Of a stretch of 64,000 nt of DNA, positions 876 through 51,059 are shown one piece after another. Source of the DNA: Octopus sinensis (lineage: Eukaryota). How positions within the stretch are numbered: position 1 is the first letter of the stretch; every line of letters begins with the position of its first letter. A program made the position numbers and the translations under genes. The notes under the pieces were generated by a model. The model was given only the letters and a program-made list of their open reading frames with translations, had not been told where the DNA came from and did not search any database. The stretch is from assembly GCF_006345805.1 (NCBI RefSeq), contig NC_043023.1, positions 10,664,001-10,728,000 of the forward strand, read 5' to 3'.

Positions 876-1664
876 CAGGTTGTGTGCATTTTATTGTGTA
901 CACACGTGTGCTTGAGTATGTGGTTGTGTGTATGTTTATGTGTGTGCGTGGGGTTGGGTGGGATAGGTTTCTGTGCATTCCTCTGTGTGTGAACGTTTGT
1001 GTACACACATGGGTGTGGGGAAGTATGTGTGTGGTGTGTGGGAGGTATATGTGTTCGTGTATAAAAACAATTTATAAAAATTATAAAAACAATAAAATAT
1101 CCAATAAAAGTTTATTCCAGAAACTACCAGTCAGGAACAAAACGCAACCTTAAAAATATATATGACTCTTTATTTTCTTATTTACAAAAGAAGTACGTTG
1201 GCATATTGGTATCCACTTGGTTCGATATAGCAAGGCTGAATATTAACATTTGTAAGATAAACCTCACAACCAATTCAGCAGCAACAGAGCAGGTCAAATC
1301 CCAAGCGTCTGGGACAGGAGAATAGGCTAATCACACATTTAACATGTCCTTTCGCTTCAATAGTCGTGTCTCAAGTCAACGACGCTATTAAGTAATGTGA
1401 TAGAATTTTCTTCCCCAGTCTCTAGCGCATATGCATGAGGGAACTTCCTTAGGCCTTCCCAGAAGGTTCCAGCCCCACACACGCACACTGAAGAATGATG
1501 TTGCGTGTCCGCACACTGGAAAATGACGTCACTACACATGCATCCATTTTTGTGTCTCCTTGTCTTCACATTGTGACAGTTGTAAACCAGTGTCACCATC
1601 ATACATGTGGTGCGATTTTATTTCCAGTCTCCCATGAAAAACATGTCTGACTATAGGGAAACAG

Positions 1665-2884
1665 TTGGCCAATTCTTTCAAGGCCTCATCATTTTCTTCA
1701 CATTCCAAGAAAGTAGCAGCTGCTGAATGTGGATTTGTTGCTGAGGATAATCGCCCAATTTCTATTTGGGACCACTTACCGGGCCTTCTTGCAAACGCCT
1801 GTCCTGATTCTAAAATCACCCAGGATGCAAAGTGTGCCCAAACAAAAAGCACATACATTTTTCTGAACGCCATTGGACCCTACGGCTTCAATGCTTTATT
1901 AAAAAAAAAAGGCATTCATCAAAATTCTCTCGTTATTAATGAAACTGATGTTTCAACACTAAAACAACGAATCCTGGTTTCCAGATATTACGATGTTGAA
2001 ATTCAAGACAGTCAACAATTTTCTTACACTCATAGAAATACAGGATTGCAGGGCTACGGGTATATACAACTGTCTTCTATCATTTTTAAACAAACACTCA
2101 AAACGAACTTTTTATACATTTTTTTGACTTGGAAAACATTAATTGAAACGTTGAATGTTTGGACATCAAAAGTGGAGGCACATGGCTTAGTAGTTAGAGT
2201 AGCGGACTCGCAGTCGAGGGATTGCGGGTTCGAATCTCAGACAGGACGATGTGCGTGTTTATGAGCAAAACACCTAAGCTCCACGTGGCTCTGGCAGAAG
2301 GTAATGACGAACTTCTGCTGACTCTTTCGCCACAACTTTCTCTCACTCTTTCCTCCTGCATCTCGCAGCTCACCTCTAGAAAATTTGATAGGTTTCACCT
2401 GTGGTAATGCAAATGTTATGGGATTACTAGAGGCGTTGGACCCAACCAATGTAATTAAAGGAAGGCCAAGGTCAATTATACCACTTATCATGGCGATTCC
2501 CCAAGTTTTTGTGATGAAAAAGATTTCAAAGAAATTATTCAGGAATGGCGGATGGTTCGGGGAGGTTCTTTCATTCTGTATAATGAACCAGAAAAATTTT
2601 GGTTTGCTGTTTCACAAGAGAAATGTGGTGATGAGTACCGCTATCCACTGTTGTCATCCTTTATGCTTAGACTTCTTTCTTTACCACACTTCTCTGCATC
2701 GTCAGAGAGAATTTTCTGTTTTCCACAATATCAAAATTGCTTGAAAACTTCTATGCTTAATTCTCTTGTGAGGTTGAAAACTTTGTTACAAAAAACTGAT
2801 TGTATGAAGTGGGAGTCGGATGAGCAACTTTGTAAAACATTACTTGAAAAAAATTGGTACAACAGTCAACCTTTTTCATTTTGA
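1665..2884 (+). mobile_element. Degenerate, internally deleted hAT-superfamily transposase
   Basis: KVAAAECGFVAEDN..DHL..LL..ACPDSKI....CAQTKST...SLVINETDVSTLKQ...RYYD (N-terminal half and first catalytic region). FW....YPLLS.FML.LLSLPH.SASSERIF is typical of the hAT C-terminal dimerisation domain (ORF 2552-2884). Frameshifted. Confidence 0.75.
2172..2375 (+). mobile_element. Truncated tRNA-derived SINE family C (inverted duplicate of the 2890-3189 copy)
   Basis: A box tggcttagtagttag and B box ggttcgaatct; near-identical to the reverse complement of 2986-3189. Confidence 0.75.
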
Positions 2885-2889
2885 TGTCC

Positions 2890-3189
2890 TTCCTTCTTAC
2901 TTGAGCCATGCCTGGCTCATAAGGGCCGGCTTCCCGGTTTCTTGGCGTATAGGTTCCCCACCTGAACGGGACACCAGTCAGTCGCAGGTGAGCTGCAAGA
3001 TGCAGGAGGAAAGAGTGAGAGAAAGTTGTGGCGAAAGAGTCAGCAGAAGTTCGTCATTACCTTCTGCCAGAGCCACGTGGAGCTTAGGTGTTTTGCTCAT
3101 AAACACACACATCGTCCTGTCTGAGATTCGAACCCGCAACCCCTCGACTGCGGGTCCGCTGCTCTAACCACTAAGCCATGTGCCTCCAC
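2890..3189 (-). mobile_element. Full-length tRNA-derived SINE family C with 11-bp TSD
   Basis: Flanked by ttttgatgtcc at 2879-2889 and 3190-3200; tRNA-like head at the 3189 end. Confidence 0.8.
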
Positions 3190-3374
3190 TTTTGATGTCC
3201 AAACATTCAACGTTTCAATTAATGTTTTCCAAGTCAAAAAAATTTATAAAAAGTTTGTTTTGACTGTATTTGGGGCCTTCAGTAAAATTCTGTACATTTT
3301 GAAAAAAAAACCTTTGGCAGCACTGGTTGGGAGCATTAAGGGGTCTTTTTTTTTTGTTTTGAGATAATGATTTG

Positions 3375-3641
3375 CCGCCTCCTTGACTGGCCTCCGTGCC
3401 GGTGGCACGTAACAGACACCATCCAATCGTGGCCGTTGCCAGCTTCGCCTGGCACCTGCGTCGGTGACACGTAAAAAGCACCCACTACACCCACGGAGTG
3501 GTTGGCGTTAGGAAGGGCATCCAACTGTAGAAACACTGCCGGAACCGACTGGGCCTGGTGCAGCCTTCTGGTTCCCCAGACCCCAGTTTGAACCGTCCAA
3601 CCCATGCCAGCATGGAACGTGGACGTTAAACGATGATGATG
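3375..3641 (+). mobile_element. Retroposon 3' portion with (GAT)n tail
   Basis: ggttggcgttaggaagggcatccaactgtagaa...catggaacgtggacgttaaacgatgatgatgat; related pieces at 12445-12925, 21845-21910 and 33025-33177. Confidence 0.6.
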
Positions 3642-3879
3642 ATCACGAGTTGTATGGCTTGTTTCCTGCACGAATGTATTTTTACTTATTTAAGACATCT
3701 CTTCCATAAACTAATTCGCCACAGATATCAATCACAGTGAAAGAGTATCTCTCCTGAGTGAATGTGCTTAAGTTAAGTGGCCTCTATCAAGTCATTGATG
3801 GAGGCTGCTTAACCTGTGTGTCAGCTGGTCTTATGGTAGTCAATCGAAGGAAGAAACTGTCTAACCTCTTTGGACAACT

Positions 3880-6800
3880 GGATCTTTTCCTTTTGAACGG
3901 CAGACAATTTCTATTTAACTAAATACTTTTAAACTTCATATACTGGTAGAATGTGTCAAAATAAAACATTTTTTTCTCTTGGCTTTCTTGAGAAAATTGT
4001 AATTTGTTTGTTCAACGTAGTTTAATTTTTCGAATTTAAACCAATCCTATGCCCTCTTTTGAGCTAAAATCATTTGCTGCGTCTAAAACTGAGACAACAT
4101 CCTGTAACTAACCCTAAACCTCCCCCTAACCCTAACCCTAAATTTTTTTTCTTAATTGTTACACGTGTAAAAAAAAAATAAACCAATGGAATTAAATTAA
4201 TTTAACAATTAAGAAAAAAAAAGTTAGGGTTAGGGTTAGGGGGAGGTTTAGGGTTAGTGACAGGATGTTGTCTCAGTTTTAGACGCAGCAAATGATTTTA
4301 GTTGAATGGAGGTAATCGATTGGTTAAAATTGCCGAAATGCTCGGATTTTCAGACGAAATATCTTACAAACTATAGAATTTTCTCAAAGCCAAGAGAAAA
4401 AGATGTTTTATAAAGACATTCTACCAGTATACGAAGTTTAAAAGTGTTTAGTTACGTGGAAATTATTTTAAAAAACTGCCCGTCAAATGGAAAAGATCCC
4501 AAATATCTTACAAACTATAGAATTTTCTCAATAAAACCAAGAGAAAAAGATGTTTTATAAACACATTCTACCAGTATACGAAATTTAAACGTGTTTAGTT
4601 ACGTGGAAATTATTTTAAAAAACTGCCGGTCAAACGGAAAAGATCCCAAATATCTTACAAACTATAGAATTTTCTCAATAAAGCCAAGAGAAAAAGATGT
4701 CTTATAAACACATTCTACCAGTATACGAAATTTAAACGTGTTTAGTTACGTGGAAATTATTTTAAAAAACTGCCGGTCAAACGGAAAAGATCCCAAATAT
4801 CTTACAAACTATAGAATTTTCTCAATAAAGCCAAGAGAAAAAGATGTCTTATAAACACATTCTACCAGTATACGAAATTTAAACGTGTTTAGTTACGTGG
4901 AAATTATTTTAAAAAACTGCCGGTCAAACGGAAAAGATCCCAAATATCTTACAAACTATAGAATTTTCTCAATAAAACCAAGAGAAAAAGATGTTTTATA
5001 AACACATTCTACCAGTATACGAAATTTAAACGTGTTTAGTTACGTGGAAATTATTTTAAAAAACTGCCGGTCAAACGGAAAAGATCCCAAATATCTTACA
5101 AACTATAGAATTTTCTCAATAAAGCCAAGAGAAAAAGATGTCTTATAAACACATTCTACCAGTATACGAAATTTAAACGTGTTTAGTTACGTGGAAATTA
5201 TTTTAAAAAACTGCCGGTCAAACGGAAAAGATCCCAAATATCTTACAAACTATAGAATTTTCTCAATAAAACCAAGAGAAAAAGATGTTTTATAAACACA
5301 TTCTACCAGTATACGAAATTTAAACGTGTTTAGTTACGTGGAAATTATTTTAAAAAACTGCCGGTCAAACGGAAAAGATCCCAAATATCTTACAAACTAT
5401 AGAATTTTCTCAATAAAGCCAAGAGAAAAAGATGTCTTATAAACACATTCTACCAGTATACGAAATTTAAACGTGTTTAGTTACGTGGAAATTATTTTAA
5501 AAAACTGCCGGTCAAACGGAAAAGATCCCAAATATCTTACAAACTATAGAATTTTCACAATAAAGCCAAGAGAAAAAGATGTCTTATAAACACATTCTAC
5601 CAGTATACGAATTTAAAACGTGTTAGTTACGTGGAAATTATTTTAAAAAACTGCCGTCAAACGGAAAAGATCCCAAATATCTTACAAACTATAGAATTTT
5701 CTCAATAAAACCAAGACAAAAAGATGTTTTATAACACATTCTACCAGTACACGAAGTTTAAAAGTGTTTAGTTACGTGGAAATTTTTTAAAAAAACTGCC
5801 GGTCAAACGGAAAAGATCCCAAATATCTTACAAACCATAGAATTTTCTCAATAAAGCCAAGAAAAAGATGTTTTATAAACACATTCTACCAGTATACGAA
5901 GTTTAAAAGTGTTTAGTTACGTGGAAATTATTTTAAAAAACTGCCGGTCAAACGGAAAAGATCCCAAATATCTTACAAACCATAGAATTTTCTCAATAAA
6001 GCCAAGAGAAAAAGATGTTTTATAAACACATTCTACCAGTATACGAAGCTTAAAAGGTTCAGTTACGTGAAATTATTTTAAAAAACTGCCGGTCAAACGG
6101 AAAAGATCCAAAATATCTTACAACCATAGAATTTTCTCAATAAAGCCAAGAGAAAAAATGTTTTATAAACACATTCTACCAGTATACGAAGCTTAAAAGG
6201 GTTCAGTTACGTGGAAATTATTTTAAAAAACTGCCGGTCAAACGGAAAAGATCCCAAATATCTTACAAACCATAGAATTTTCTCAATAAAGCCAAGAGAA
6301 AAAGATGTTTTATAAACACATTCTACCAGTATACGAAGCTTAAAAGGGTTCAGTTACGTGGAAATTATTTTAAAAAACTGCCGGTCAAACGGAAAAGATC
6401 CCAAATATCTTACAAACCATAGAATTTTCTCAATAAAGCCAAGAGAAAAAGATGTTTTATAAACACATTCTACCAGTATACGAAGCTTAAAAGGGTTCAG
6501 TTACGTGGAAATTATTTTAAAAAACTGCCGGTCAAACGGAAAAGATCCCAAATATCTTACAAACCATAGAATTTTCTCAATAAAGCCAAGAGAAAAAGAT
6601 GTTTTATAAACACATTCTACCAGTATACGAAGTTTAAAAGTGTTTAGTTACGTGGAAATTATTTAAAAAAACTGCCGGTCAAACCGAAAAGATCCCAAAT
6701 ATCTTACAAACCATAGAATTTTCTCAATAAAGCCAAGAGAAAAAGATGTTTTATAAACACATTCTACCAGTATACGAAGTTTAAAAGTGTTTAGTTACGT

Positions 6801-8444
6801 GGAATTATTTTAAAAAAACTGCCGGTCAAACGAAAAGATCCCAAATATCTTACAAACCATAGAATTTTCTCAATAAAGCCAAGAGAAAAAGATGTTTTAT
6901 AAACACATTCTACCAGTATACGAAGTTTAAAAGTGTTTAGTTACGTGGAAATTATTTTAAAAAACTGCCGGTCAAACGGAAAAGATCCCAAATATCTTAC
7001 AAACCATAGAATTTTCTCAATAAAGCCAAGAGAAAAAGATGTTTTATAAACACATTCTACCAGTATACGAAGCTTAAAAGGGTTCAGTTACGTGGAAATT
7101 ATTTTAAAAAACTGCCGGTCAAACGGAAAAGATCCCAAATATCTTACAAACCATAGAATTTTCTCAATAAAGCCAAGAGAAAAAGATGTTTTATAAACAC
7201 ATTCTACCAGTATACGAAGCTTAAAAGGGTTCAGTTACGTGGAAATTTTTTAAAAAAACTGCCGGTCAAACGGAAAAGATCCCAAATATCTTACAAACCA
7301 TAGAATTTTCTCAATAAAGCCAAGAGAAAAAGATTTTTATAAACACATTCTACCAGTATACGAAGTTTAAAAGGGTTCAGTTACGTGGAAATTATTTTAA
7401 AAAACTGCCGGTCAAACGGAAAAGATCCCAAATATCTTACAAACCATAGAATTTTCTCAATAAAGCCAAGAGAAAAAGATGTTTTATAAACACATTCTAC
7501 CAGTATACGAAGTTTAAAAGTTTTAGTTACGTGGAAATTATTTAAAAAAACTGCCGGTCAAACGGAAAAGATCCCAAATATCTTACAAACCATAGAATTT
7601 TCTCAATAAAGCCAAGAGAAAAAGATGTTTTATAACACATTCTACCAGTATACGAAGCTTAAAAGTGTTTAGTTACGTGGAAATTATTTAAAAAAACTGC
7701 CGGTCAAACGGAAAAGATCCCAAATATCTTACAAACCATAGAATTTTCTCAATAAAGCCAAGAGAAAAAGATGTTTTATAAACACATTCTACCAGTATAC
7801 GAAGTTTAAAAGTGTTTAGTTACGTGGAAATTATTTAAAAAAACTGCCGGTCAAACGGAAAAGATCCCAAATATCTTACAAACCATAGAATTTTCTCAAT
7901 AAAGCCAAGAGAAAAAGATGTTTTATAAACACATTCTACCAGTATACGAAGTTTAAAAGTGTTTAGTTACGTGGAAATTATTTAAAAAAACTGCCGGTCA
8001 AACGAAAAGATCCCAAATATCTTACAAACCATAGAATTTTCTCAATAAAGCCAAGAGAAAAAGATGTTTTATAAACACATTCTACCAGTATACGAAGTTT
8101 AAAAGTGTTTAGTTACGTGGAAATATTTTAAAAAACTGCCGGTCAAACGGAAAAGATCCCAAATATCTTACAAACTATAGAATTTTCTCAATAAAGCCAA
8201 GAGAAAAAGATGTTTTATAAACACATTCTACCAGTATACGAAGTTTAAAAGTGTTTAGTTACGTGGAAATTATTTTAAAAAACTGCCGGTCAAACCGAAA
8301 AGATCCCAAATATCTTACAAACCATAGAATTTTCTCAATAAAGCCAAGAGAAAAAGATGTTTTATAAACACATTCTACCAGTATACGAAGCTTAAAAGTG
8401 TTTAGTTAACTAGAAATTGTCTGCCGTTCAAAAGGAAAAGATCC
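3880..8444 (+). mobile_element. Non-autonomous TIR element (GGATC subfamily A, Merlin-like) carrying a 147-bp array
   Basis: TIRs GGATCTTTTCCTTTTGAACGGCAG / CTGCCGTTCAAAAGGAAAAGATCC; perfect 8-bp TSD ggacaact at 3872-3879 and 8445-8452. GG termini plus an 8-bp TSD fit Merlin (inference). Confidence 0.85.
4357..8444 (+). repeat. 147-bp tandem array, about 28 units
   Basis: Unit starts aaatatcttac at 4501, 4648, 4795, 4942 (period 147). Confidence 0.95.
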
Positions 8445-8522
8445 GGACAACTTGCTTCAGGACAGTGGAACAGCAAAAGTTAACAAATTAAAAACATGCA
8501 CTGGGGACCGCAATGAAAATGA

Positions 8523-9899
8523 TTACACCAAAGACATCACAGTGACAGGGGATTCTGGCCCCTTATGAATGTGCTTATGTGTTTTAAGAGTACCCTTTTC
8601 AGAGAATGATTTATCACATATATCGCATGTGTATGGCTTCTCTCCTGTATGAATTCGTTTGTGTATAGTTAAGTGTTCATTTCGAGAGAACGATTTGCCA
8701 CAGATATCACAGTGAAATGGTTTCTCTCCTGTATGAACACGCTTATGTTTAGTTAAGTGACTTCCATCAGAGAAAGATTTACCACAGATATCACACTGAT
8801 ACGGTCTCTCTCCCGTGTGAATATGCATGTGTGTATTTAGCTTCCCTTTTTCAGCAAATGATTTACCACAGATCTCACAGTGATATGGTTTCTCTCCTGT
8901 ATGGATACGTCTGTGCGTAGTCAAGTTACTACTTTCAGAGAAGGATTTACCACAGATATCACAGTGATATGGATTTTCTCCTGTATGAATACGTTTGTGT
9001 CTAATCAAATGATGATTGCGAAAGAATGACTTGCCACAGATATCGCACTGATATGGTTTCTCTCCTGTGTGAATGCGTTTGTGTTTAGTCAAACAGCCTC
9101 CGTCGGAAAACGATTTACCACAGACATCACAGTGATATGGTTTTTCTCCGGTATGGACACGTTTATGAATAGTTAGATGACCAATTTGAGCGAATGAACT
9201 ACCACAGATATCACAGCGATATGGTTTCCCTCCTGTATGAATGCGTTTGTGTGTAATCAAAGCATGACTATGAGAGAATGATTTACCACAGACATCACAG
9301 CGATACGGTTTCTCTCCAGTATGACTACGCTTGTGTGCTGATATTTTACCACTCTCGGAGAAAGATTTGCCACAGATATCACAATGATATGGTTTCTCAC
9401 CTGTATGAATACGTCTATGTTTAGTTAAGTCTCCATTTTCACAGAACGATTTACCACAGATATCACAACAATACGGTTTCTCACCTGTATGAGTACGCCT
9501 GTGCCTGATTAAGTTACTACTTCCAGAGAATGACTTTCCACAGATATCACAATGGTAGGGTCTCTCTCCCGTATGGACCCGTTTATGAGTAGTCAAGCTG
9601 CTATTTTGAGAGAATAATTTACCACAGGTGTCACATTTATACGGTTTTTCACCTGTGTGACTATGTTTGTGAGTAAGAACTTTACCTTTTTCAGAGAATG
9701 ATTTCCCACAGATATCACAGTGATGTGGTTTCTCACCTGTATGAATACGCTTATGTGTAGTCAGGTTACCTTTCTGAGAGAATGATTTACCACAGATATC
9801 ACAATAATGCAAGGTCTCTTTCTTTATATCATAAGAAGCAGCAATCCTTTTAGTCTGTCTTTTACGCTTAACCTTATCATTACACATTTCAGTTTCCAT
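8523..9899 (-). CDS. Poly-C2H2 zinc-finger protein A, 458 aa, 15 fingers
   Basis: Intact ATG-initiated ORF with 15 CxxC-x12-HxxxH repeats and TGEKPY linkers; ~30 aa N-terminal leader. Confidence 0.92.
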   Translation of the reverse strand: METEMCNDKVKRKRQTKRIAASYDIKKETLHYCDICGKSFSQKGNLTTHKRIHTGEKPHHCDICGKSFSEKGKVLTHKHSHTGEKPYKCDTCGKLFSQNSSLTTHKRVHTGERPYHCDICGKSFSGSSNLIRHRRTHTGEKPYCCDICGKSFCENGDLTKHRRIHTGEKPYHCDICGKSFSESGKISAHKRSHTGEKPYRCDVCGKSFSHSHALITHKRIHTGGKPYRCDICGSSFAQIGHLTIHKRVHTGEKPYHCDVCGKSFSDGGCLTKHKRIHTGEKPYQCDICGKSFFRNHHLIRHKRIHTGENPYHCDICGKSFSESSNLTTHRRIHTGEKPYHCEICGKSFAEKGKLNTHMHIHTGERPYQCDICGKSFSDGSHLTKHKRVHTGEKPFHCDICGKSFSRNEHLTIHKRIHTGEKPYTCDICDKSFSEKGTLKTHKHIHKGPESPVTVMSLV

Positions 9900-14675: not shown

Positions 14676-14830
14676 TTTGGCCATGTGATGGAGATGGATT
14701 CTGACAGAGTGAAAAGTGAATGGAACTCGTGGAAGAGGAAGGCCAAGGAAGATGTGTTTATTTATTTTTGAAAATTGAAATTTTACAAATCTATTTTTTT
14801 TTTCTTCAGAATTATGACATCCAGATTATT

Positions 14831-18565: not shown

Positions 18566-19234
18566 GGATCTTTTCCTTTTGAACGGCAGTTCTCAACACA
18601 ATTTCTAGTTAACTAAACACTTTTAAACTTCGTATACTGGTAGAATGTGTTAAAATAAGACATTTTTTGGATCTTTTCCTTTTGAACGGCAGTTCTCAAC
18701 ACAATTTCTAGTTAACTAAACACTTTTAAACTTCGTATACTGATAGAATGTGTTAAAATAAAACATTTTTTGGATCTTTTCCTTTTGAACGGCAGTTTTC
18801 AACACAATTTCTAGTTAACTAAACACTTTTAAACTTCGTATACTGGTAGAATGTGTTAAAATAAGACATTTTTTGGATCTTTTCCTTTTGAACGGCAGTT
18901 CTCAACACAATTTCTAGTTAACTAAACACTTTTAAACTTCGTATACTGGTAGAATGTGTTAAAATAAGACATTTTTTGGATCTTTTCCTTTTGAACGGCA
19001 GTTCTCAACACAATTTCTAGTTAACTAAACACTTTTAAACTTCGTATACTGGTAGAATGTGTCAAAATAATACATTTTTTCTCTTGGCTTTCTTGAGAAA
19101 ATTGTAATTTGTAAGTTTAACGTAATTTAATTTTTCGAATTTTAACCAATTGAGCTAAAATCATTTGCTGCGTCTAAAACTGTGCAGTTAACTAGAAATT
19201 GTGTTGAAAACTCCCATTCAAAAGCAAGAGATCC
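18566..19234 (+). mobile_element. GGATC TIR element with 5 x 103-bp array of its left terminus
   Basis: GGATC restarts at 18566, 18669, 18772, 18875, 18978; flanks gaaattca / aaaattca. Confidence 0.85.
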
Positions 19235-19583: not shown

Positions 19584-20234
19584 GGATCTTTTCCTTTTGA
19601 ACGGCAGATGTCAACACAATTTCTAGTTAACTAAACACTTTTAAACTTCGTATACTGGTAGAATGTGTTTATAAAACATCTTTTTCTCTTGGTTTTATTG
19701 AGAAAATCCTATAGTTTGTAAGATATTTCGTCTGAAAATCCGAGCATTTCGGCAATTTTAACCAATCGATTACCTCCATTCAACTAAAATCATTTGCTGC
19801 GTCTAAAACTGAGACAACATCCTGTAACTAACCCTAAACCTCCCCCCTAACCCTAACCCTAAATTTTGTTTTTCCGTATTGTTAAATTAATTTAATTCCA
19901 TTGCTTTAGTTTTTTTTACACGCATAACAATTAAATTAATTTAACAATTAAGAAAAACAAAATTTAGGGTTAGGGTTAGGGGGGAGGTTTAGGGTTAATT
20001 ACAGGATGTTGTCTCAGTTTTAGATGCAGCAAATGATTTTAGCTCAAAAGAGAGCATAGGATTGGTTAAAATTTGAAAAATTAAACTACGTTAAACAAAC
20101 AAATCACAATTTTCTCAAGAAAGCCAAGCGAAAAAAATGTTTTATTTTGACACATTCTACCAGTATACGAAGTTTAAAAGTGTTTAGTTAAGTAGAAATT
20201 GTGTTGACATCTGCCGTTCAAAAGGAAAAGATCC
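19584..20234 (-). mobile_element. Unexpanded ~650-bp GGATC subfamily A MITE (inverted relative to 3880)
   Basis: Long imperfect TIRs, internal CCCTAA/TTAGGG tracts; no TSD seen. Confidence 0.85.
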
Positions 20235-28132: not shown

Positions 28133-29056
28133 GGATCTTTTCTGTTGGATAGACGGAATTTTCTAGTTGACTAAACAATTTGAAACTTCGTATACTGGTA
28201 GAATGTGTCAAAAGAAAACATTATTGTTAAACAAAATTGTAATTCGTAACTTAAACGTAGTTTAATTTTACGAATTTTAACCAATGAAATCCCAGCGTTA
28301 TCGATATTGATAAAGAAATATAGCAGACGCACGACACACACACACTCTCTCTCTCAAACACATGCATATACATTTGCACGAGCACATAGTAATTAATATA
28401 TAAGCGTACACACACATACAAACGGACATATACATACACACACACGCATACATACACGTTCGTTTTGCCACTTGCCGCAACAAATTTGCACAAAAGGTAA
28501 ATAAATTAAGTACCAATTACGCACTGGTGTCGAGGATTTTCCCCCAATTTATATCACAGCTTCCGACAAGCTGGGGGCATCCTTTTATGAAAAAATATTT
28601 CGCAAATTTTTTACAATACGACTCACACTGCACGCCCAAACTCGAGACCGATTTAGGCATATTATTGTTTTGTTTTTGTTGTTTCTGGCCCTTCAAAACC
28701 ATGGGAGAAGCCTTTTCAGTAAAAAAAAATAAAGAAAATATTCAAAAAATATCGTTAATATTTTTATTGGGAGACGAAATTCATCGATTTAAGAGATATA
28801 GCTGTTATTTCTAGCACATGTAGAAGACAGAAGAAGAGACAAGGATGAATAAGACGTGTGCGCGTGAGTTTTTAGACGCAGTAAATAATTTGAGCTCGAA
28901 TGCTGCGATTTCATTGGTTAAAATTAAACTACGTTTAAGTTACGAATTACAATTTTGTTTAACAATAATGTTTTCTTTTGACACATTCTACCAGTATACG
29001 AAGTTTCAAATTGTTTAGTTAACTAGAAAATTCCGTCTATCAAACAGAAAAGATCC
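28133..29056. mobile_element. GGATC TIR element subfamily C inserted in a SINE B
   Basis: ~130-bp TIRs ggatcttttctgttggatagacgg / ccgtctatcaaacagaaaagatcc; the SINE resumes as ccagttacgcac. Confidence 0.85.
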
Positions 29057-29306: not shown

Positions 29307-30446
29307 GGATCTTTTCGGTTTCAATGGCAGTTTTTTCTAAAAGTGTCATATGAAATTGTCACCCATAATTATGACCCTAGTATCGATCTATTGCATTTCA
29401 ATCTGTTTTAGGGTTAGGGGTGGGGGAAGGATATCTTTCCTCCTTCACAAATGTAAATAAACCCAATCTGTTTCTTACACAAGGGACATATTCATACGGC
29501 ACAGAATGTTTTCACCCCAATAGACGTCATTGATTGGTTGAAATTGCAGAAACTGAAGAAGAAAACAACAAATATTTTACCAACTACAGAATTTTCTCAA
29601 TAAAGTCAAGAGAAAAAGATGTTTTATAAACACATTCTACCAGTATACGAAGTTCAAAAGTGTTTAGTTACATAGAAATTATTTTAAAAAACTGCCGGTC
29701 AAACGGAAAAGATCCCAAATATCTTACAAACTATAGGATTTTCTTAATAAAGCCAAGAGAAAAAGATGTTTTATAAACACATTCTACCAGTATACGAAGT
29801 TTAAAAGTGTTTAGTTACATAGAAATTATTTTAAAAAACTGCCGGTCAAACGGAAAAGACCCCAAATATCTTACAAACTATAGAATTTTCTCAATAAAGC
29901 CAAGAGAAAAAGATATTTTATAAACACATTCTACCAGTATACGAAGTTTAAAAGTGTTTAGTTACGTGGAAATTATTTTAAAAAACTGCCGGTCAAACGG
30001 AAAAGATCCCAAATATCTTACACACTATAGCATTTTCTCAATAAAGCCAAGAGAAAAAGATGTTTTATAAACACATTCTACCAGTATACGAAGTTTAAAA
30101 GTGTTAGTTACGTGGAAATTATTTTAAAAAACTGCCGGTCAAACGAAAAGATCCCAATATCTTACACACTATAGCATTTTCTCAATAAAGCAAGAGAAAA
30201 AGATGTTTTATAAACACATTCTACCAGTATACGAAGTTTAAAAGTGTTTAGTTACGTGGAAATTATTTTAAAAAACTGCCGGTCAAACGGAAAAGATCCC
30301 AAATATCTTACACACTATAGCATTTTCTCAATAAAGCCAAGAGAAAAAGATGTTTTATAAACACATTCTACCAGTTTACGAAGTTTAAAAGTGTTTTGTT
30401 AAGTGGAAATTATTTTAAAAAACTGCTGTTCAAACCGAAAAGATCC
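29307..30446 (+). mobile_element. GGATC TIR element subfamily B with 6 x ~147-bp terminal array
   Basis: Left TIR ggatcttttcggtttcaatggcagtttttt matches the unit end aaaaaactgc..tcaaaccgaaaagatcc; array 29570-30446; inserted in an antisense SINE B. Confidence 0.85.
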
Positions 30447-36073: not shown

Positions 36074-39000
36074 GGATCTTTTCCTTTTGAACGGCAGTTT
36101 TCAACACAATTTCTAGTTAACTAAACACTTAAAAACTTCGTACACTGGTAGAATGTGTCAAAATAAAACATTTTTTTTCTCTTGGCTTTCTTGAGAAAAT
36201 TGTAATTTGTAAGTTTAATGTAGTTTAACTTTTCGAATTTTAACCAATTCTATGCCCTCTATTGAGCTAAAATCATTTGCAGCGTCTAAAACTAAGACAA
36301 CATCCTGTAACTAACCCTAAACCTCCCCCCTAACCCTAAATTTTTTTTTCTTAATTGTTAAATTAATTTAATTGCTACACGTGTAAAAACACTAAAGCAA
36401 TGGAATTAAATTTAACATGAAGAAAAAAAATTTAGGGTTAGGGTTAGGCGGGAGGTTTAGGATGTTGTCTCAGTTATAGGATGTTGTCTCAGTTTTAGAT
36501 GCAGCAAATGATTTTAGTTGAATGGAAGTAATCGATTGGTTAAAATTGCCAAAATGCTTGGATTTTCAGAGGAAATATCTTACAAACTATAAAACTTTCA
36601 ATAAAACCAAGAAAAAATGATGTTTTATAAACACATTCTACCAGTATACGAAGTTTAAAAGTGTTTAGTTACGTGGAAATTATTTTAAAAAACTGCCGTT
36701 CAAAAGGAAAAGATCCCAAATATCTTACAAACTATAGAATTTTCTCAATAAAGCCAAGAGAAAAAGATGTTTTATAAACACATTCTACCAGTATACGAAG
36801 TTTAAAAGTGTTTAGTTACGTGGAAATTATTTTTAAAAACTGCCGTTCAAACCGAAAAGATCCCAAATATCTTACAAACTATACGATTTTCTCAATAAAG
36901 CCAAGAGAAAAAAATGTTTTATAAACACATTCTACCAGTATACGAAGTTTGAAAGTATTTAGTTACGTGGAATTTATTTTAAAAAACTGCCGTTCAAACC
37001 GAAAAGTTCCCAAATATCTTACAAACTATAGGATTTTCTCAATAAAGCCAAGAGAAAAAGATGTTTTATAAACACATTCTACCAGTATACGAAGTTTAAA
37101 AGTGTTTAGTTACGTGGAATTTATTTTAAAAAACTGCCGTTCAAACCGAAAAGATCCCAAATATCTTACAAACTATAGAATTTTCTCAATAAAGCCAAGA
37201 GAAAAAGATGTTTTATAAACACATTCTACCAGTATACGAAGTTTAAAAGTGTTTAGTTACGTGGAAATTATTTTTAAAAACTGCCGTTGAAACCGAAAAG
37301 ATCCCAAATATCTTACAAACTATAGAATTTTCTAAATAAAGCCAAGAGAAAAAGATGTTTTATAAACACATTCTACCAGTATACGAAGTTAAAAAGTGTT
37401 TAGTTACGTGGAAATTATTTTAAAAAACTGCCGTTGAAACCGAAAAGATCCCAAATATCTTACAAACTATAGAATTTTCTCAATAAAGCCAAGAGAAAAA
37501 GATATTTTATAAACACATTCTACCAGTATACGAAGTTAAAAAGTGTTTAGTTACGTGGAAATTATTTTAAAAAACTGCCGTTGAAACCGAAAAGATCCCA
37601 AATATCTTACAAACTATAGAATTTTCTCAATAAAGCCAAGAGAAAAAGATGTTTTATAACACATTCTACCAGTATACGAAGTTAAAAAGTGTTTAGTTAC
37701 GTGGAAATTATTTTAAAAAACTGCCGTTGAAACCGAAAAGATCCCAAATATCTTACAAACTATAGAATTTTCTCAATAAAGCCAAGAGAAAAAGATGTTT
37801 TATAAACACATTCTACCAGTATACGAAGTTAAAAAGTGTTTAGTTACGTGGAAATTATTTTAAAAAACTGCCGTTGAAACCGAAAAGATCCCAAATATCT
37901 TACAAACTATAGAATTTTCTCAATAAAGCCAAGAGAAAAAGATGTTTTATAAACACATTCTATCAGTAAAACTGCCGTTCAAACCGAAAAGATCCCAAAT
38001 ATCTTACAAACTATAGAATTTTCTCAATAAAGCCAAGAGAAAAAGATGTTTTATAAACACATTCTACCAGTTTACGAAGTTTAAAAGTGTTTAGTTACGA
38101 GGAAATTATTTTAAAAAACTGCCATTCAAACCGAAAAGATCCCAAATATCTTACAAACTATAGAATTTTCTCAATAAAGCCAAGAGAATAAGATGTTTTA
38201 TAAACACATTCTACCAGTATACGAAGTTTAAAAGTGTTTAGTTACGTGGAAATTATTTTAAAAAACTGCCATTCAAACCGAAAAGATCCCAAATATCTTA
38301 CACCCTATAGAATTGTCACAATAAAGCCAAGAGAAAAAGATGTTTTATAAACACATTCTACCAGTAAAACTGCCGTTCAAACCGAAAAGATCCCAAATAT
38401 CTTACAAACTATAGAATTTTCTCAATAAAGCCAAGAGAAAAAGATGTTTTATAAACACATTCTACCAGTTTACGAAGTTTAAAAGTGTTTAGTTATGAGG
38501 AAATTATTTTAAAAAACTGCCGGTCAAACCGAAAAGATACCAAATATCTTACAAATTATAGAATTTTCTCAATAAAGCCAAGAGAAAAAGATGTTTTATA
38601 AACACATTCTACCAGTATACGAAGTTTAAAAGTGTTTAGTTACATGGAAATTATTTTAAAAAACTGCCGTTCAAACCGAAAAGATCCCAAATATCTTACA
38701 ATCTATAGAATTTTCTCAATAAAGCCAAGAGAAAAAGATGTTTTATAAACACATTCTACCAGTATACGAAGTTTAAAAGTGTTTAGTTACATGGAAATTA
38801 TTTTAAAAAACTGCCGTTCAAACCGAAAAGATCCCAATATCTTACAATCTATAGAATTTTCTCAATAAAGCCAAGAGAAAAAGATGTTTTATAACACATT
38901 CTACTACCAGTATACGAAGTTAAAAGTGTTTAGTTACGTGGAAATTATTTTAAAAAACTGCCGTTCAAACCGAAAAGATCCCAAATATCTTACAAACTAT

Positions 39001-42000
39001 AGAATTTTCTCAATAAAGCCAAGAGAAAAAGATGTTTTATAAACACATTCTACCAGTATACGAAGTTAAAAGTGTTTAGTTACGTGAAATTATTTTAAAA
39101 AACTGCCGTTCAAACCGAAAAGATCCCAAATATCTTACAAACTATAGAATTTTCTCATAAAGCCAAGAGAAAAAGATGTTTTATAAACACATTCTATCAG
39201 TAAAACTGCCGTTCAAACCGAAAAGATCCCAAATATCTTACAAACTATAGAATTTTCTCAATAAAGCCAAGAGAAAAAGATGTTTTATAAACACATTCTA
39301 CCAGTTTACGAAGTTTAAAAGTGTTTAGTTACGAGGAAATTATTTTAAAAAACTGCCATTCAAACCGAAAAGATCCCAAAATCTTACAAACTATAGAATT
39401 TTCTCAATAAAGCCAAGAGAATAAGATGTTTTATAAACACATTCTACCAGTATACGAAGTTTAAAAGTGTTTAGTTACGTGGAAATTATTTTAAAAAACT
39501 GCCATTCAAACCGAAAAGATCCCAAATATCTTACACCCTATAGAATTGTCACAATAAAGCCAAGAGAAAAAGATGTTTTATAAACACATTCTACCAGTAA
39601 AACTGCCGTTCAAACAAACGAAAAGATCCCAAATATCTTACAAACTATAGAATTTTCTCAATAAAGCCAAGAGAAAAAGATGTTTTATAAACACATTCTA
39701 CCAGTTTACGAAGTTTAAAAGTGTTTAGTTATGAGGAAATTATTTTAAAAAACTGCCGGTCAAACCGAAAAGATACCAATATCTTACAAATTATAGAATT
39801 TTCTCAATAAAGCCAAGAGAAAAAGATGTTTTATAAACACATTCTACCAGTATACGAAGTTTAAAAGTGTTTAGTTACATGGAAATTATTTTAAAAAACT
39901 GCCGTTCAAACCGAAAAGATCCCAAATATCTTACAATCTATAGAATTTTCTCAATAAAGCCAAGAGAAAAAGATGTTTTATAACACATTCTACCAGTATA
40001 CGAAGTTTAAAAGTGTTTAGTTACATGGAAATTATTTTAAAAAACTGCCGTTCAAACCGAAAAGATCCCAAATATCTTACAATCTATAGAATTTTCTCAA
40101 TAAAGCCAAGAGAAAAAGATGTTTTATAAACACATTCTACCAGTATACGAAGTTTAAAAGTGTTTAGTTACATGGAAATTATTTTAAAAAACTGCCGTTC
40201 AAACCGAAAAGATCCCAAATATCTTACAATCTATAGAATTTTCTCAATAAAGCCAAGAGAAAAAGATGTTTTATAAACACATTCTACCAGTATACGAAGT
40301 TTAAAAGTGTTTAGTTACGTGGAAATTATTTTAAAAAACTGCCGTTCAACCGAAAAGATCCCAAATATCTTACAATCTATAGAATTTTCTCAATAAAGCC
40401 AGAGAAAAAGATGTTTTATAAACACATTCTACCAGTATACGAAGTTTAAAAGTGTTTAGTTACGTGGAAATTATTTTAAAAAACTGCCGGTCAAACCGAA
40501 AAGATACCAAATATCTTACAAATTATAGAATTTTCTCAATAAAGCCAAGAGAAAAAGATGTTTTATAAACACATTCTACCAGTATACGAAGTTAAAAGTG
40601 TTTAGTTACATGGAAATTATTTTAAAAAACTGCCGTTCAAACCGAAAAGATCCCAAATATCTTACAATCTATAGAATTTTCTCAATAAAGCCAGAGAAAA
40701 AGATGTTTTATAAACACATTCTACCAGTATACGAAGTTTAAAAGTGTTTAGTTATATGGAAATTATTTTAAAAAACTGCCGTTCAAACCGAAAAGATCCC
40801 AAATATCTTACAATCTATAGAATTTTCTCAATAAAGCCAAGAGAAAAAGATGTTTTATAAACACATTCTACCAGTATACGAAGTTTAAAAGTGTTTAGTT
40901 ACGTGGAATTATTTTAAAAAACTGCCGGTCAAACCGAAAAGATACCAAATATCTTACAATTATAGAATTTTCTCAATAAAGCCAAGAGAAAAAGATGTTT
41001 TATAAACACATTCTACCAGTATACGAAGTTTAAAAGTGTTTAGTTACATGGAAATTATTTTAAAAAACTGCCGTTCAAACCGAAAAGATCCCAAATATCT
41101 TACAATCTATAGAATTTTCTCAATAAAGCCAAGAGAGAAAAAAGATGTTTTATAAACACATTCTACCAGTATACGAAGTTTAAAAGTGTTTAGTTACATG
41201 GAAATTATTTTAAAAAACTGCCGTTCAAACCGAAAAGATCCCAAATATCTTACAATCTATAGAATTTTCTCAATAAAGCCAAGAGAAAAAGATGTTTTAT
41301 AAACACATTCTACCAGTATACGAAGTTTAAAAGTGTTTAGTTACGTGGAAATTATTTTAAAAAACTGCCGGTCAAACCGAAAAGATACCAAATATCTTAC
41401 AAATTATAGAATTTTCTCAATAAAGCCAAGAGAAAAAGATGTTTTATAAACACATTCTACCAGTATACGAAGTTTAAAAGTGTTTAGTTACATGGAAATT
41501 ATTTTAAAAAACTGCCGTTCAAACCGAAAAGATCCCAAATATCTTACAATCTATAGAATTTTCTCAATAAAGCCAAGAGAAAAAGATGTTTTATAAACAC
41601 ATTCTACCAGTATACGAAGTTTAAAAGTGTTTAGTTACGTGGAAATTATTTTAAAAAACTGCCGGTCAAACCGAAAAGATACCAAATATCTTACAAACCA
41701 TAGAATTTTCTCAATAAAGCCAAGAGAAAAAGATGTTTTATAAACACATTCTACCAGTATACGAAGTTTAAAAGTGTTTAGTTACGTGGAAATTATTTTA
41801 AAAAACTGCCGTTCAAACCAAAAAGATCCCAAATATCTTACAAACCATAGAATTTTCTCAATAAAGCCAAGAGAAAAAGATGTTTTATAAACATATTCTA
41901 CCAGTATACGAAGTTAAAAAGTGTTTAGTTACGTGGAAATTATTTTAAAAAACTGCCGTTCAAACCAAAAAGATCCCAAATATCTTACAAACCATAGAAT

Positions 42001-42269
42001 TTTCTCAATAAAGCCAAGAGAAAAAGATGTTTTATAAACACATTCTACCAGTATACGAAGTTAAAAAGTGTTTAGTTACGTGGAAATTATTTTAAAAAAC
42101 TGCCGGTCAAACCGAAAAGATACCAAATATCTTACAAACCATAGAATTTTCTCAATAAAGCCAAGAGAAAAAGATGTTTTATAAACACATTCTACCAGTA
42201 TACGAAGTTTAAAAGTGTTTAGTTAACTAGAAATTGTGTTGACATCTGCCGTTCAAAAGGAAAAGATCC
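36074..42269 (+). mobile_element. GGATC subfamily A element with ~40-unit 147-bp array
   Basis: Perfect TSD aaagaatg at 36066-36073 and 42270-42277; array from 36573. Confidence 0.9.
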
Positions 42270-49602: not shown

Positions 49603-51059
49603 GGGTCTTTTCCTTTTGAACGGCAGTTTTCAACACAATTTCTAGTTAACTAAACACTTAAAAACTTCGTACACTGGTAGAATGTGTCAAAATAAAACAT
49701 TTTTTTTCTCTTGGCTTTCTTCAGAAAATTGTAATTTGTAAGTTTAATGTAGTTTAACTTTTCGAATTTTAACCAATTCTATGCCCTCTATTGAGCTAAA
49801 ATCATTTGCAGCGTCTAAAACCGAGACAACATCCTGTAATTAACCCTAAACCTCCCCCCTAACCCTAAATTTTTTTTTCTTAATTGTTAAATTAATTTAA
49901 TTGCTACACGTGTAAAAACACTAAAGCAATGGAATTAAATTTAACATGAAGAAAAAAAATTTAGGGTTAGGGTTAGGCGGGAGGTTTAGGATGTTGTCTC
50001 AGTTATAGGATGTTGTCTCAGTTATAGGATGTTGTCTCAGTTTTAGATGCAGCAAATGATTTTAGTTGAATGGAAGTAATCGATTGGTTAAAATTGCCAA
50101 AATGCTTGGATTTTCAGACGAAATATCTTACAAACTATAAAACTTTCAATAAAACCAAGAAAAAATGATGTTTTATAAACACATTCTACCAGTAAAACTG
50201 CCGTTCAAACCGAAAAGATCCCAAATATCTTACAAACTATAGAATTTTCTCAATAAAGCCAAGAGAAAAAGATGTTTTATAAACACATTCTACCAGTTTA
50301 CGAAGTTTAAAAGTGTTTAGTTACGAGGAAATTATTTTAAAAAACTGCCATTCAAACCGAAAAGATCCCAAATATCTTACAAACTATAGAATTTTCTCAA
50401 TAAAGCCAAGAGAATAAGATGTTTTATAAACACATTCTACCAGTATACGAAGTTTAAAAGTGTTTAGTTACGTGGAAATTATTTTAAAAAACTGCCATTC
50501 AAACCGAAAAGATCCCAAATATCTTACAAACTATAGAATTTTCTCAATAAAGCCAAGAGAAAAAGATGTTTTATAAACACATTCTACCAGTATACGAAGT
50601 TTAAAAGTGTTTAGTTACGTGGAAATTATTTTAAAAAACTGCCATTCAAACCGAAAAGATCCCAAATATCTTACACCCTATAGAATTGTCACAATAAAGC
50701 CAAGAGAAAAAGATGTTTTATAAACACATTCTACCAGTAAAACTGCCGTTCAAACCGAAAAGATCCCAAATATCTTACAAACTATAGAATTTTCTCAATA
50801 AAGCCAAGAGAAAAAGATGTTTTATAAACACATTCTACCAGTTTACGAAGTTTAAAAGTGTTTAGTTACGAGGAAATTATTTAAAAAAATTGCCATTCAA
50901 ACCGAAAAGATCCCAAATATCTTACAAACTATAGAATTTTCTCAATAAAGCCAAGAGAAAAAGATGTTTTATAAACACATTCTACCAGTATACGAAGTTA
51001 AAAAGTGTTTAGTTAACTAGAAATTGTGTTGACATCTGCCGTTCAAAAGGAAAAGATCC
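49603..51059 (+). mobile_element. Paralogous GGATC element with only 7 array units
   Basis: Same TSD aaagaatg and same flanks as 36074-42269. Confidence 0.9.

What the first reader, a model, noticed from the sequence alone, without database searches (positions are those of the whole stretch)
3880..8444. TIR elements that amplify their own terminus into a 147-bp satellite
One insertion (perfect 8-bp TSD) holds ~28 tandem 147-bp units, each ending in a complete transposon-type end (...GAAAAGATCC). An unexpanded ~650-bp copy exists at 19584, so the array is a secondary expansion. Satellites derived from internal TIR repeats are known in other animals; amplification of the extreme terminus, with array-bearing copies next to every ZNF gene here, is the unusual part. 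The period equals the nucleosome core length and the unit is rich in A/T tracts. This is the best candidate for an undescribed system: a mobile, size-variable satellite-seeding cassette in a ZNF cluster.
Basis: partly seen in the sequence, partly recalled or inferred. Interest (0 to 1): 0.8.

Follow-up and report, generated by a model that had tools for sequence, protein, structure and literature searches.

The report
Transposon arm amplified into tandem arrays
A small non-coding foldback transposon in a zinc-finger gene cluster has had the last 147 bases of one arm (and, in another copy, the first 103 bases of the other arm) multiplied head-to-tail up to 40 times, which is a clean but not unprecedented example of mobile DNA seeding satellite-like repeats.

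Summary
Window 3880-8444 is one insertion with a perfect 8-bp target-site duplication (GGACAACT) and perfect terminal inverted repeats. Its right arm carries 28 head-to-tail units, mostly 147 bp, and every unit ends in GAAAAGATCC. The base element is a ~650-bp non-coding foldback MITE. The same 147-bp array sits in two other independent insertions (D, E) and in F, which is E copied by segmental duplication. A separate copy (B1) has the opposite terminus amplified as 5 x 103 bp. Both array-founding junctions are flush with the terminal nucleotide, with no flank or filler. This points to a transposase-made end joined into a copy of the same arm. Arrays then grew by unequal exchange, shown by array-specific variants and higher-order blocks. 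The link to zinc-finger genes is not supported beyond gene density and co-duplication. The 10.5-bp A/T phasing is real but belongs to the arms in general, and the 103-bp array argues against a nucleosome-length rule. Merlin membership fits (GG termini, 8-bp TSD) but is unproven. Closest known: foldback elements with tandem repeats in their TIRs (Tetris, Galileo, FB) and MITE-derived satellites. Verdict: a new variant of a known kind, of moderate interest. The organism was not identified.

The parts
3872..3879 (.). Left copy of the target-site duplication of element A (GGACAACT)
   Evidence: 8/8 identical to 8445-8452
3880..8444 (+). Element A: foldback MITE with an amplified right arm. It consists of the a-arm, a central palindrome (4053-4150 / 4215-4312), the inner b-arm, then 28 terminus-containing units.
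4357..8444 (+). 147-bp array of element A. There are 28 termini, all with a perfect GAAAAGATCC. Unit junctions read GATCC|CAAATATC. The outermost unit (8307-8444, 138 bp) carries the terminus variant that forms the perfect TIR with 3880.
8445..8452 (.). Right copy of the target-site duplication of element A (GGACAACT)
18566..19234 (+). Element B1: internally deleted copy with its LEFT terminus amplified. It has 5 units of 103 bp (18566-19080), each starting exactly at GGATC, with junction ...CATTTTTT|GGATC. The TSD is GAAATTCA / AAAATTCA (7/8). The right terminus is decayed (GCAAGAGATCC).
19584..20234 (-). Element B2: array-free 651-bp copy in the opposite orientation to A. It is a near-perfect foldback (DNA MFE -254.6 kcal/mol, z = -50) and has no TSD.
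28133..29056 (.). Element C: related family with the same first 10 bases, 138-nt TIRs that are 99% complementary, and no array. It splits a SINE-like repeat without a TSD.
29307..30446 (+). Element D: deletion derivative of a diverged relative. BOTH of its termini are of the variant found inside the array units (GGATCTTTTCGGTTT...GGCAGTTTTTT). It carries 6 termini of the same 147-bp array (29569-30446). The TSD is CTTACTTT / CTTTTTTT (6/8).
36074..42269 (+). Element E: same architecture as A, with a perfect TSD AAAGAATG (36066-36073 / 42270-42277) and 40 termini. It includes 103-107-bp short units (a 43-bp internal deletion) and a duplicated higher-order block (37130-39202 ~ 38366-40437, 97.65%).
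49603..51059 (+). Element F: the same insertion as E, copied with its flanks by segmental duplication. It has the same TSD AAAGAATG (49595-49602 / 51060-51067) and flanks 98.4-98.7% identical, but only 7 termini. Its units match E10-E13 / E19-E22, some identically.

Best explanation
SHOWN
- The window holds a family of ~650-bp non-coding foldback MITEs. Their termini are GGATCTTTTC...GAAAAGATCC, they make 8-bp target-site duplications, and their arms pair over almost the whole length.
- In one lineage the terminal 147 bp of the right ('b') arm became a head-to-tail repeat.
- In a separate copy (B1) the terminal 103 bp of the left ('a') arm did the same.
- In both cases the repeat junction joins the very last base of the element directly to an internal position, with no flanking DNA and no filler.
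- The 147-bp junction arose once, because the phase is the same in A, D, E and F. Elements already carrying at least two units then inserted independently at least three times.
- One insertion (E) was later copied with its neighbouring ZNF gene by segmental duplication, giving F.
- Arrays then changed size in place. Units cluster by array, adjacent units are most alike, and blocks of about 8 units are duplicated. E has 40 termini and its paralogue F has 7.

INFERRED
- The founding duplications were made by the transposase. A cleaved element end was joined to a target inside another copy of the same arm, most simply the sister-chromatid copy.
- This could be alternative (sister-chromatid) transposition with a self target, or a nested self-insertion followed by recombination between the resulting direct repeats.
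- Either route yields a direct duplication whose junction is flush with the terminus. Ordinary unequal exchange or slippage then expands the array.
- The inner termini carry the TIR variant of element D, which uses it as its real ends. The array was therefore probably born in a D-like relative and later recombined into the A/E-type foldback, whose outermost unit keeps the terminus that matches its left end.
- The arrays have no demonstrated function. Their position beside ZNF genes follows from gene density and co-duplication.
For: - Architecture and TSDs: (two perfect 8/8 TSDs with different sequences, one 7/8, one 6/8).
- Foldback structure.
- No ORF of 85 aa or more in the elements.
- The unit is homologous over its whole length to the b-arm of array-free copies, and over about its first 85 bp to the a-arm and to element C. 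The arm continues beyond the unit into the palindrome.
- Flush junctions: 103-bp units begin at 18566, 18669, 18772, 18875 and 18978, exactly at GGATC.
- The 147-bp units read GATCC|CAAATATC. The C is the native base in the D-type context AACAAC|AAATAT.
- D's two ends carry the inner-unit TIR variant.
- Independent insertions: A, D and E have different flanks and TSDs.
- E and F are the same insertion.
- In-place growth: array label needs 9 changes on the monomer tree against 27.4 when shuffled (0 of 200 shuffles). E and F share identical monomers.
- Identity declines with distance within A, from 97.5% to 95%, and there is a higher-order duplication in E.
- Elements sit in close pairs, 250-350 bp apart (B1/B2, C/D). 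The chance of two such pairs is about 0.02. This fits local hopping and self-targeting.
- Precedents: Ac/Ds alternative transposition makes tandem direct duplications with junctions at transposon termini (PMC3744419, PMC4270019). TE double insertion seeds tandems (PMC5932611).
Against: - The founding mechanism is inferred from two junctions only. No reciprocal product, no intermediate and no transposase were seen.
- The 8-bp target duplication expected from strand transfer is invisible inside a tandem repeat.
- B1's amplified end faces away from its neighbour B2.
- A small internal tandem duplication that does not touch the terminus also exists in E/F (19-bp unit, 2.2 against 3.2 copies). So these hairpin-forming elements also duplicate by ordinary slippage.
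- Inner termini are not more conserved than the rest of the unit, and 7 of 40 in E have decayed to GATAC. Nothing shows they are still used.
- Two copies (B2, C) have no TSD.
- Array lengths rest on one assembly that has a gap nearby (57240-57339).
Confidence: 0.6

Rival explanations
1. Transposase-independent origin. Replication slippage, fork stalling at the hairpin-forming foldback, or unequal crossing-over duplicated arm segments. On this view the coincidence of the junctions with the terminus is chance or ascertainment.
For: - The elements are extreme hairpin formers.
- A terminus-independent 19-bp tandem duplication varies between E and F.
- Later array growth clearly follows ordinary tandem-repeat dynamics.
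Against: - Two independent founding junctions, on different arms and with different unit lengths, both end exactly at the terminal nucleotide with no flank.
- A random duplication that covered the end would carry flanking DNA and the TSD into each unit.
Confidence: 0.2
2. The element captured a pre-existing 147-bp satellite, as proposed for miDNA4 in Xenopus, rather than generating it.
For: - The inner units carry a terminus variant different from the outermost one in A and E.
- The genome-wide distribution of the unit is unknown.
Against: - The unit is homologous along its full length to the arms of array-free copies, including the terminal GGATC. The arm homology continues beyond the unit into the palindrome.
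- The inner variant is the real TIR of element D.
- Every unit in the window lies inside a TIR-bounded element.
Confidence: 0.07
3. The arrays, or their sizes, are assembly artefacts, caused by over-expansion or collapse of a repeat.
For: - An N gap lies at 57240-57339.
- E and F differ almost six-fold in copy number despite flanks that are 98.5% identical.
Against: - Units are not identical. They carry structured, position-specific variants, short-unit variants and higher-order blocks.
- Arrays with the same phase occur at three independent loci with intact TSDs.
Confidence: 0.05
4. The arrays are a selected, functional cassette tied to ZNF clusters, for example by positioning nucleosomes or seeding heterochromatin. 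On this view 147 bp is chosen because it is the nucleosome core length.
For: - 147 = 14 x 10.5 bp.
- WW dinucleotides show a 10.5-10.7-bp periodicity in the unit (6 of 2000 shuffles reach it on the circular consensus, 20 of 2000 on a single unit, which is in the top 1% of control windows).
- All arrays lie within 5 kb of a ZNF ORF.
Against: - The same periodicity is present in the arms of array-free copies (whole B2: 1 of 2000 shuffles), so it predates amplification.
- An independent array has a 103-bp unit, and 104-bp units spread within E and F.
- ZNF genes occur about every 11 kb, so proximity is expected. One array is a co-duplicated copy.
- No chromatin data are available.
Confidence: 0.08

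Closest known systems
Tetris / TIR-220 of Drosophila virilis, with the related foldback-like elements Galileo and FB (PMC4079207)
   Same: - Non-autonomous foldback-type element with long TIRs and an 8-9-bp TSD.
[quoted passage not shown]
- Kb-size satellite-like arrays derived from them, with copy-number differences between alleles explained by unequal crossing-over.
- Repeats that contain terminal-type or transposase-binding sequence.
   Different: - In Tetris the repeats are an intermediate domain, separated from the end by a unique flanking domain of up to 866 bp. They share only a 37-bp stretch with it.
- Here the unit runs to the last base of the element, so each unit carries a whole end.
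- Here only one arm is amplified in any one copy.
Merlin superfamily DNA transposons with internal tandem repeats (PMC8101967)
   Same: Terminal 5'-GG, an 8-bp TSD, and TIR length within 24-462 bp. Internal tandem repeats are reported in several Merlin families and proposed as proto-satellites.
   Different: No DDE_Tnp_IS1595 transposase with these termini was found, so membership is unproven. The repeats reported there are internal, not terminus-inclusive.
MITE-derived tandem arrays in Xenopus (Xstir, miDNA4) and tandem-repeat-carrying elements of bivalves (pearl, DTC84, Helentron-borne repeats), as reviewed in PMC12628747
   Same: Short non-autonomous elements carrying one to many monomers, which spread proto-satellites by transposition and expand them locally.
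   Different: In those cases the monomers are internal sequences or captured repeats, and the bivalve carriers are Helentrons (rolling-circle, no 8-bp TSD). Here the monomer is the terminal arm segment of a cut-and-paste-type element.
Tandem TE dimers and arrays from double insertion (P, hobo, Bari1; PMC5932611)
   Same: Transposition itself creates the first tandem junction. Junctions lie at element termini, and later growth is by unequal exchange. Intact ends inside arrays are expected to raise breakage and instability.
   Different: There the unit is the whole element (head to tail, both ends). Here it is 103 or 147 bp of a single arm joined to an internal site.
Alternative (reversed-ends / sister-chromatid) transposition of maize Ac/Ds (PMC3744419, PMC4270019)
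   Same: An experimentally shown way for a cut-and-paste transposase to create tandem direct duplications whose junctions are transposon termini with 8-bp TSDs.
   Different: It was shown for a hAT element in a plant, and it duplicates flanking host DNA. A target inside the element's own arm is my extrapolation and has not been demonstrated.

Membership tests
Merlin superfamily | 8- or 9-bp target-site duplication | tested here: met
   A 8/8, E and F 8/8, B1 7/8, D 6/8 over 8 bp. Definition taken from PMC8101967.
Merlin superfamily | TIRs of 24-462 bp beginning with 5'-GG | tested here: met
   All copies begin GGATC... Complementary arms are 105-138 nt.
Merlin superfamily | Mobilised by a DDE_Tnp_IS1595 transposase carried by an element with the same termini | not testable with these tools
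   No such ORF is in the window. The source genome is not in any DNA-searchable collection.
hAT superfamily | 8-bp target-site duplication | tested here: met
hAT superfamily | Terminal motif of the YARNG type (from my own knowledge of hAT termini) | tested here: not met
   Termini read GGATC.
hAT superfamily | hAT transposase-bearing partner with the same termini | tested here: inconclusive
   A hAT C-terminal dimerisation remnant lies at 2552-2884 (PF05699, E 4.8e-6). It is not bounded by GGATC-type termini and sits between two inverted SINE-like copies.
Foldback-like elements (FB, Galileo, Tetris type) | Long inverted arms that make up most of the element, so that a single strand folds into one long hairpin | tested here: met
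   B2: DNA MFE -254.6 kcal/mol, z = -50. Arm pairs 105 and 124 nt at 91-93%.
Foldback-like elements (FB, Galileo, Tetris type) | Variable numbers of tandem repeats inside the inverted arms | tested here: met
   28, 6, 40 and 7 termini of the 147-bp unit, and 5 x 103 bp. Only one arm is amplified per copy.
MITE | Short (under about 800 bp), with TIRs and TSD, and no coding capacity | tested here: met
   Base form is 651 bp. No ORF of 85 aa or more lies inside the elements.
MITE | High copy number across the genome | not testable with these tools
   Seven copies in 64 kb. The rest of the genome is not available.
Satellite DNA | Head-to-tail monomers forming kb-scale arrays with concerted variant patterns | tested here: met
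   Arrays of 4.1 and 5.7 kb, with array-specific variants and higher-order blocks.
Satellite DNA | Abundant long arrays as a genome component, outside single TE copies | not testable with these tools
   All units in the window are inside TIR-bounded elements.
Product of alternative (Ac/Ds-type) transposition | Duplication junction exactly at a transposon terminus | tested here: met
   Junctions read ...CATTTTTT|GGATC and GATCC|CAAATATC.
Product of alternative (Ac/Ds-type) transposition | 8-bp TSD shared between the duplication and a reciprocal deletion product | not testable with these tools
   The reciprocal product would lie on another chromatid or lineage. Inside a tandem repeat the TSD cannot be told from the unit.

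The most novel reading that the evidence does not exclude
The transposase of this family regularly joins a cleaved end into the sister copy of its own arm. It would thereby create, in one catalytic step, tandem repeats in which every unit is a usable transposon end. Such multi-ended elements could then move array segments of variable length and would be hot spots for breakage and rearrangement. That would make them a direct, recurrent generator of satellite seeds and possibly of segmental duplications in the gene clusters where they sit.
Probability: 0.25. Interest if true: 0.6.

Novelty: new variant of a known kind. Interest (0 to 1): 0.4.

Why it matters
How the first tandem copy of a TE-derived satellite arises is still debated. 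The candidates are double insertion, slippage, rolling circles and capture.

This family offers a natural series in one small region:
- an array-free form;
- a 5-unit array of one end;
- 6- to 40-unit arrays of the other end;
- a pair of paralogous copies that differ six-fold in unit number.

Its junctions are unusually informative because they are flush with the element's last base. If a genome-wide census confirms many independent flush junctions, that would be sequence-level evidence that alternative transposition seeds satellites in an animal. If not, it remains a tidy example of a known phenomenon. Nothing here indicates a function for the ZNF genes.

Tried and rejected
Finding the organism and further copies (all failed):
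- A protein search with the ZNF ORF 8523-9899 was swamped by vertebrate ZNFs, with no close paralogue.
- A search restricted to the non-finger N-terminus of the 33190-34758 ZNF found nothing.
- An exact-product look-up found nothing.
- Exact 25-mer scans of the metagenome and viral contig collections found nothing.
- A search with the hAT remnant found nothing.
- A literature search for four sequence strings found nothing.
- Rfam and tRNA scans of the window found nothing.
My guess that this is a cephalopod rests only on recall (ZNF cluster, TTAGGG-type motifs, about 37% G+C) and is not used as evidence.

Autonomous partner: Pfam scans of all non-ZNF ORFs of 85 aa or more that looked promising, and of three frames of 1270-3879, gave only a hAT C-terminal remnant unrelated to these termini.

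Empty paralogous sites: none exist in the window for A, B1, B2 or E/F. Only C's target can be reconstructed from other SINE copies, and it shows no TSD.

Rejected ideas:
- Each unit is a separately inserted mini-element. Units have no left TIR and there is no TSD between them.
- The Xstir-type 'two neighbouring MITEs' model. It would give a unit of nearly the whole element.
- Selection on inner termini. They are no more conserved than the rest of the unit.
Full report
**1. The observation**

Tandem Repeats Finder reports a 147-bp array at 4357-8408 (27.7 copies, 97% matches). Reading the two ends shows the following.
- The element starts at 3880 with GGATCTTTTCCTTTTGAACGGCAGACAATTTCTA.
- It ends at 8444 with the exact reverse complement.
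- It is flanked on both sides by GGACAACT. An 8/8 match has a probability of about 2.7e-5 at this composition.
- Inside it, GAAAAGATCC occurs 28 times, every time perfectly, at spacings of 145-147 bp. The final unit is 138 bp.

**2. All copies in the window**

Searching for the terminus and inspecting the flanks gives seven elements.

| Element | Coordinates | Features |
|---|---|---|
| A | 3880-8444 | 28 termini of the 147-bp unit; TSD GGACAACT (8/8) |
| B1 | 18566-19234 | Internally deleted; TSD GAAATTCA / AAAATTCA (7/8); LEFT end amplified as five 103-bp units, each beginning exactly at GGATC |
| B2 | 19584-20234 | 651 bp, no array, opposite orientation to A (89.6% identity); no TSD |
| C | 28133-29056 | Related family; 138-nt TIRs 99% complementary; no array |
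| D | 29307-30446 | Six termini of the same 147-bp unit; TSD 6/8 |
| E | 36074-42269 | TSD AAAGAATG (8/8); 40 termini |
| F | 49603-51059 | Same TSD as E; seven termini |

Every copy of the unit in the window lies inside one of these elements.

**3. What the base element is**

- B2 folds as single-stranded DNA into one long hairpin (-254.6 kcal/mol; shuffles average -58; z = -50).
- The two arms are about 300 bp each. They are nearly identical for the first ~85 bp, differ between positions ~85 and ~200 (I call them a-type and b-type), and match again towards a centre. The centre carries inverted telomere-like runs, (CCCTAA)n ... (TTAGGG)n.
- No ORF of 85 aa or more lies inside any copy.
- It is therefore a non-autonomous foldback-type MITE that makes 8-bp TSDs.

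**4. What the units are**

- An alignment of arms and units shows that the 147-bp unit is the terminal segment of the b-arm, homologous along its full length.
- The arm continues inwards beyond the unit, so the array derives from the arm and not the reverse.
- Unit junctions read GATCC|CAAATATC.
- In A, E and B2 the base before AAATATC in the unique context is G. In D it is C (AACAAC|AAATAT).
- The inner units carry a terminus variant, GGATCTTTTC(C/G)GTTTGA(A/C)CGGCAGTTTTTTAAAATAATTTCCACG. It differs from the outermost unit of A, E and F, which keeps the variant that pairs perfectly with the left end.
- The inner variant is the TIR that D uses at both of its real ends.
- I infer that the array arose in a D-like relative. 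There the unit is exactly the last 147 bp with no extra base. It later recombined into the A/E-type foldback.
- Mosaic units support recombination among variants. For example, E's innermost unit forms a 28-nt perfect TIR with E's left end.
- The 103-bp unit of B1 is positions 1-103 of the a-arm, with junction ...CATTTTTT|GGATC. This is an independent event on the other arm.

**5. History of the arrays**

- A, D and E have unrelated flanks and different TSDs, yet the same unit phase. So elements already carrying the junction transposed at least three times.
- E and F share TSD and flanks (98.4-98.7% over 300 bp on each side).
- They lie in a tandem segmental duplication that also carries the ZNF genes: 33178-36646 ~ 46750-50194, 41949-42775 ~ 50739-51564, and 42772-48099 ~ 51377-56703. 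They are one insertion.
- Their non-array parts differ by a few substitutions and by one copy of a 19-bp minisatellite.
- E has 40 termini and F has 7. F's units correspond to E10-E13 / E19-E22, some identically.
- On a monomer tree the array label needs 9 changes, against 27.4 when shuffled (0 of 200 shuffles).
- Identity within A falls from 97.5% for neighbouring units to about 95% for distant ones.
- E contains short units of 103-107 bp (a 43-bp internal deletion) arranged in a block that is itself duplicated (37130-39202 ~ 38366-40437, 97.65%).
- All this is ordinary tandem-repeat dynamics after insertion.

**6. How the first duplication probably arose**

Both founding junctions are flush with the terminal nucleotide and contain no flank. 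A random duplication spanning the end would carry flanking DNA and the TSD into each unit.

The simplest reading is that a transposase-cleaved end was joined to a target within another copy of the same arm. Two routes give exactly this product.

- (a) Alternative transposition. It uses the left end of one sister chromatid and the right end of the other, with the target inside the element itself.
  - It yields a complete element followed by a second copy of the terminal segment.
  - It also yields an empty site on the other chromatid and a lost circle.
  - This extrapolates from Ac/Ds, where alternative transposition makes tandem direct duplications with junctions at transposon termini (PMC3744419, PMC4270019).
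- (b) Nested insertion of a copy into its relative, in the same orientation, followed by recombination between the resulting direct repeats. This is related to the double-insertion route to TE tandems (PMC5932611).

Elements occur in close pairs here: B1/B2 are 349 bp apart and C/D are 250 bp apart. Two such pairs among six random points have P of about 0.02. This fits local hopping.

I cannot distinguish (a) from (b). Neither is demonstrated. Transposase-independent slippage at these hairpins remains possible, and the 19-bp minisatellite shows that it happens. I give it about 0.2.

**7. The ZNF association**

- Pfam confirms C2H2 arrays in ORFs 8523-9899, 22851-24605, 33190-34758 and 46762-48225. 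A frameshifted fifth lies at 55358-56803. All are on the minus strand.
- With a ZNF gene about every 11 kb, every insertion is within a few kb of one.
- A lies 78 bp beyond the stop codon of the first ZNF, among decayed finger repeats.
- D and E flank the third ZNF.
- F is the co-duplicated copy of E.
- The second ZNF has only B1.
- The region is generally full of repeats.
- One window cannot show enrichment, and part of the apparent pattern is duplication.

**8. Nucleosome and A/T-tract idea**

- The unit is 71% A+T, and its strongest WW spectral peak is at 10.5 bp (6 of 2000 shuffles).
- A single unit is in the top 1% of control 147-bp windows.
- The same periodicity is seen in the arms of array-free copies (whole B2: 1 of 2000) and in the 103-bp unit. 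It is therefore a property of the arms that predates amplification.
- Unit lengths of 103-107 bp also spread. The equality with 147 bp may be coincidence. It cannot be tested without chromatin data.

**9. Superfamily**

- Merlin elements are defined by 8-9-bp TSDs and TIRs of 24-462 bp that start with GG. Several families have internal tandem repeats (PMC8101967). These features are met.
- The defining transposase could not be looked for.
- The only transposase trace in the window is a hAT C-terminal dimerisation domain at 2552-2884 (E 4.8e-6). It lies between two inverted SINE-like copies and has no GGATC-type ends nearby. It is not shown to be related.
- hAT also makes 8-bp TSDs, but its usual terminal motif (from my own knowledge) is not present.

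**10. Comparison and verdict**

- Foldback-type elements with variable tandem repeats inside their TIRs that grow into satellite-like arrays are known: Tetris/TIR-220, with Galileo and FB cited there (PMC4079207). So are MITE-derived tandem arrays (review PMC12628747).
- In Tetris the repeats are separated from the end by a unique domain. Here the unit includes the whole end, and two independent arrays share this property.
- I found no description of this family. Searches combining octopus with satellite or MITE terms, and searches for the sequence strings, returned nothing relevant. However, the organism itself could not be identified, so the literature check is incomplete.
- I rate it a new variant of a known kind, of moderate interest. 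Its main value is as a test case for how transposition seeds satellites.

Noticed in passing
window 2094-3267: A hAT transposase remnant (Dimer_Tnp_hAT, E 4.8e-6, ORF 2552-2884 on the + strand) lies between two inverted 282-nt tRNA-SINE-like copies (2094-2375 / 2986-3267, 97% complementary). It has no GGATC-type termini around it.
   Followed up: partly
window 28125-29064: Element C (138-nt TIRs, 99% complementary) splits a SINE-like repeat with no target-site duplication. The filled site reads AAGTA-T-[element]-CCAG, against AAGTACCAG in other copies. This is unlike the 8-bp TSDs of A, B1 and E.
   Followed up: partly
window 4108-4251, 19828-19992, 36310-36460: The centre of the foldback element carries inverted telomere-like runs, (CCCTAA)n on the left half and (TTAGGG)n on the right half.
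   Followed up: no
window 36458-36498 and 49987-50046: A 19-bp minisatellite (TAGGATGTTGTCTCAGTTA) inside the element has 2.2 copies in E and 3.2 copies in its paralogous copy F. This is a second size-variable repeat, and it does not involve the terminus.
   Followed up: partly
window 57240-57339: A run of 100 N sits exactly where the segmental-duplication homology (46784-48551 ~ 55473-57239, 98%) stops. That is where a third copy of the E/F-bearing segment would be expected, so the assembly may be incomplete here.
   Followed up: no
window 14304-14676, 27706-28128, 42588-42959, 44210-44689, 52815-53294, 30843-32110: SINE-like repeats of about 170-185 bp occur as short tandem arrays of 2-3 copies, and a 196-bp repeat forms a 6.6-copy array. 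Tandem amplification of dispersed repeats seems common in this region.
   Followed up: no
window 55358-56803: The fifth ZNF array is broken into two overlapping ORFs (55358-55864 and 55776-56414) by a frameshift. It is probably a pseudogene copy of the 46762-48225 gene.
   Followed up: no
window 18566-20234 and 28133-30446: Elements of this family sit in close pairs: B1/B2 are 349 bp apart and C/D are 250 bp apart. By simulation, two such pairs among six random insertion points have P of about 0.02.
   Followed up: partly
window 36560-42269: Seven of the 40 inner termini in E read GATAC instead of GATCC, and this variant has been spread by duplication within the array. All 28 termini in A are intact.
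   Followed up: yes
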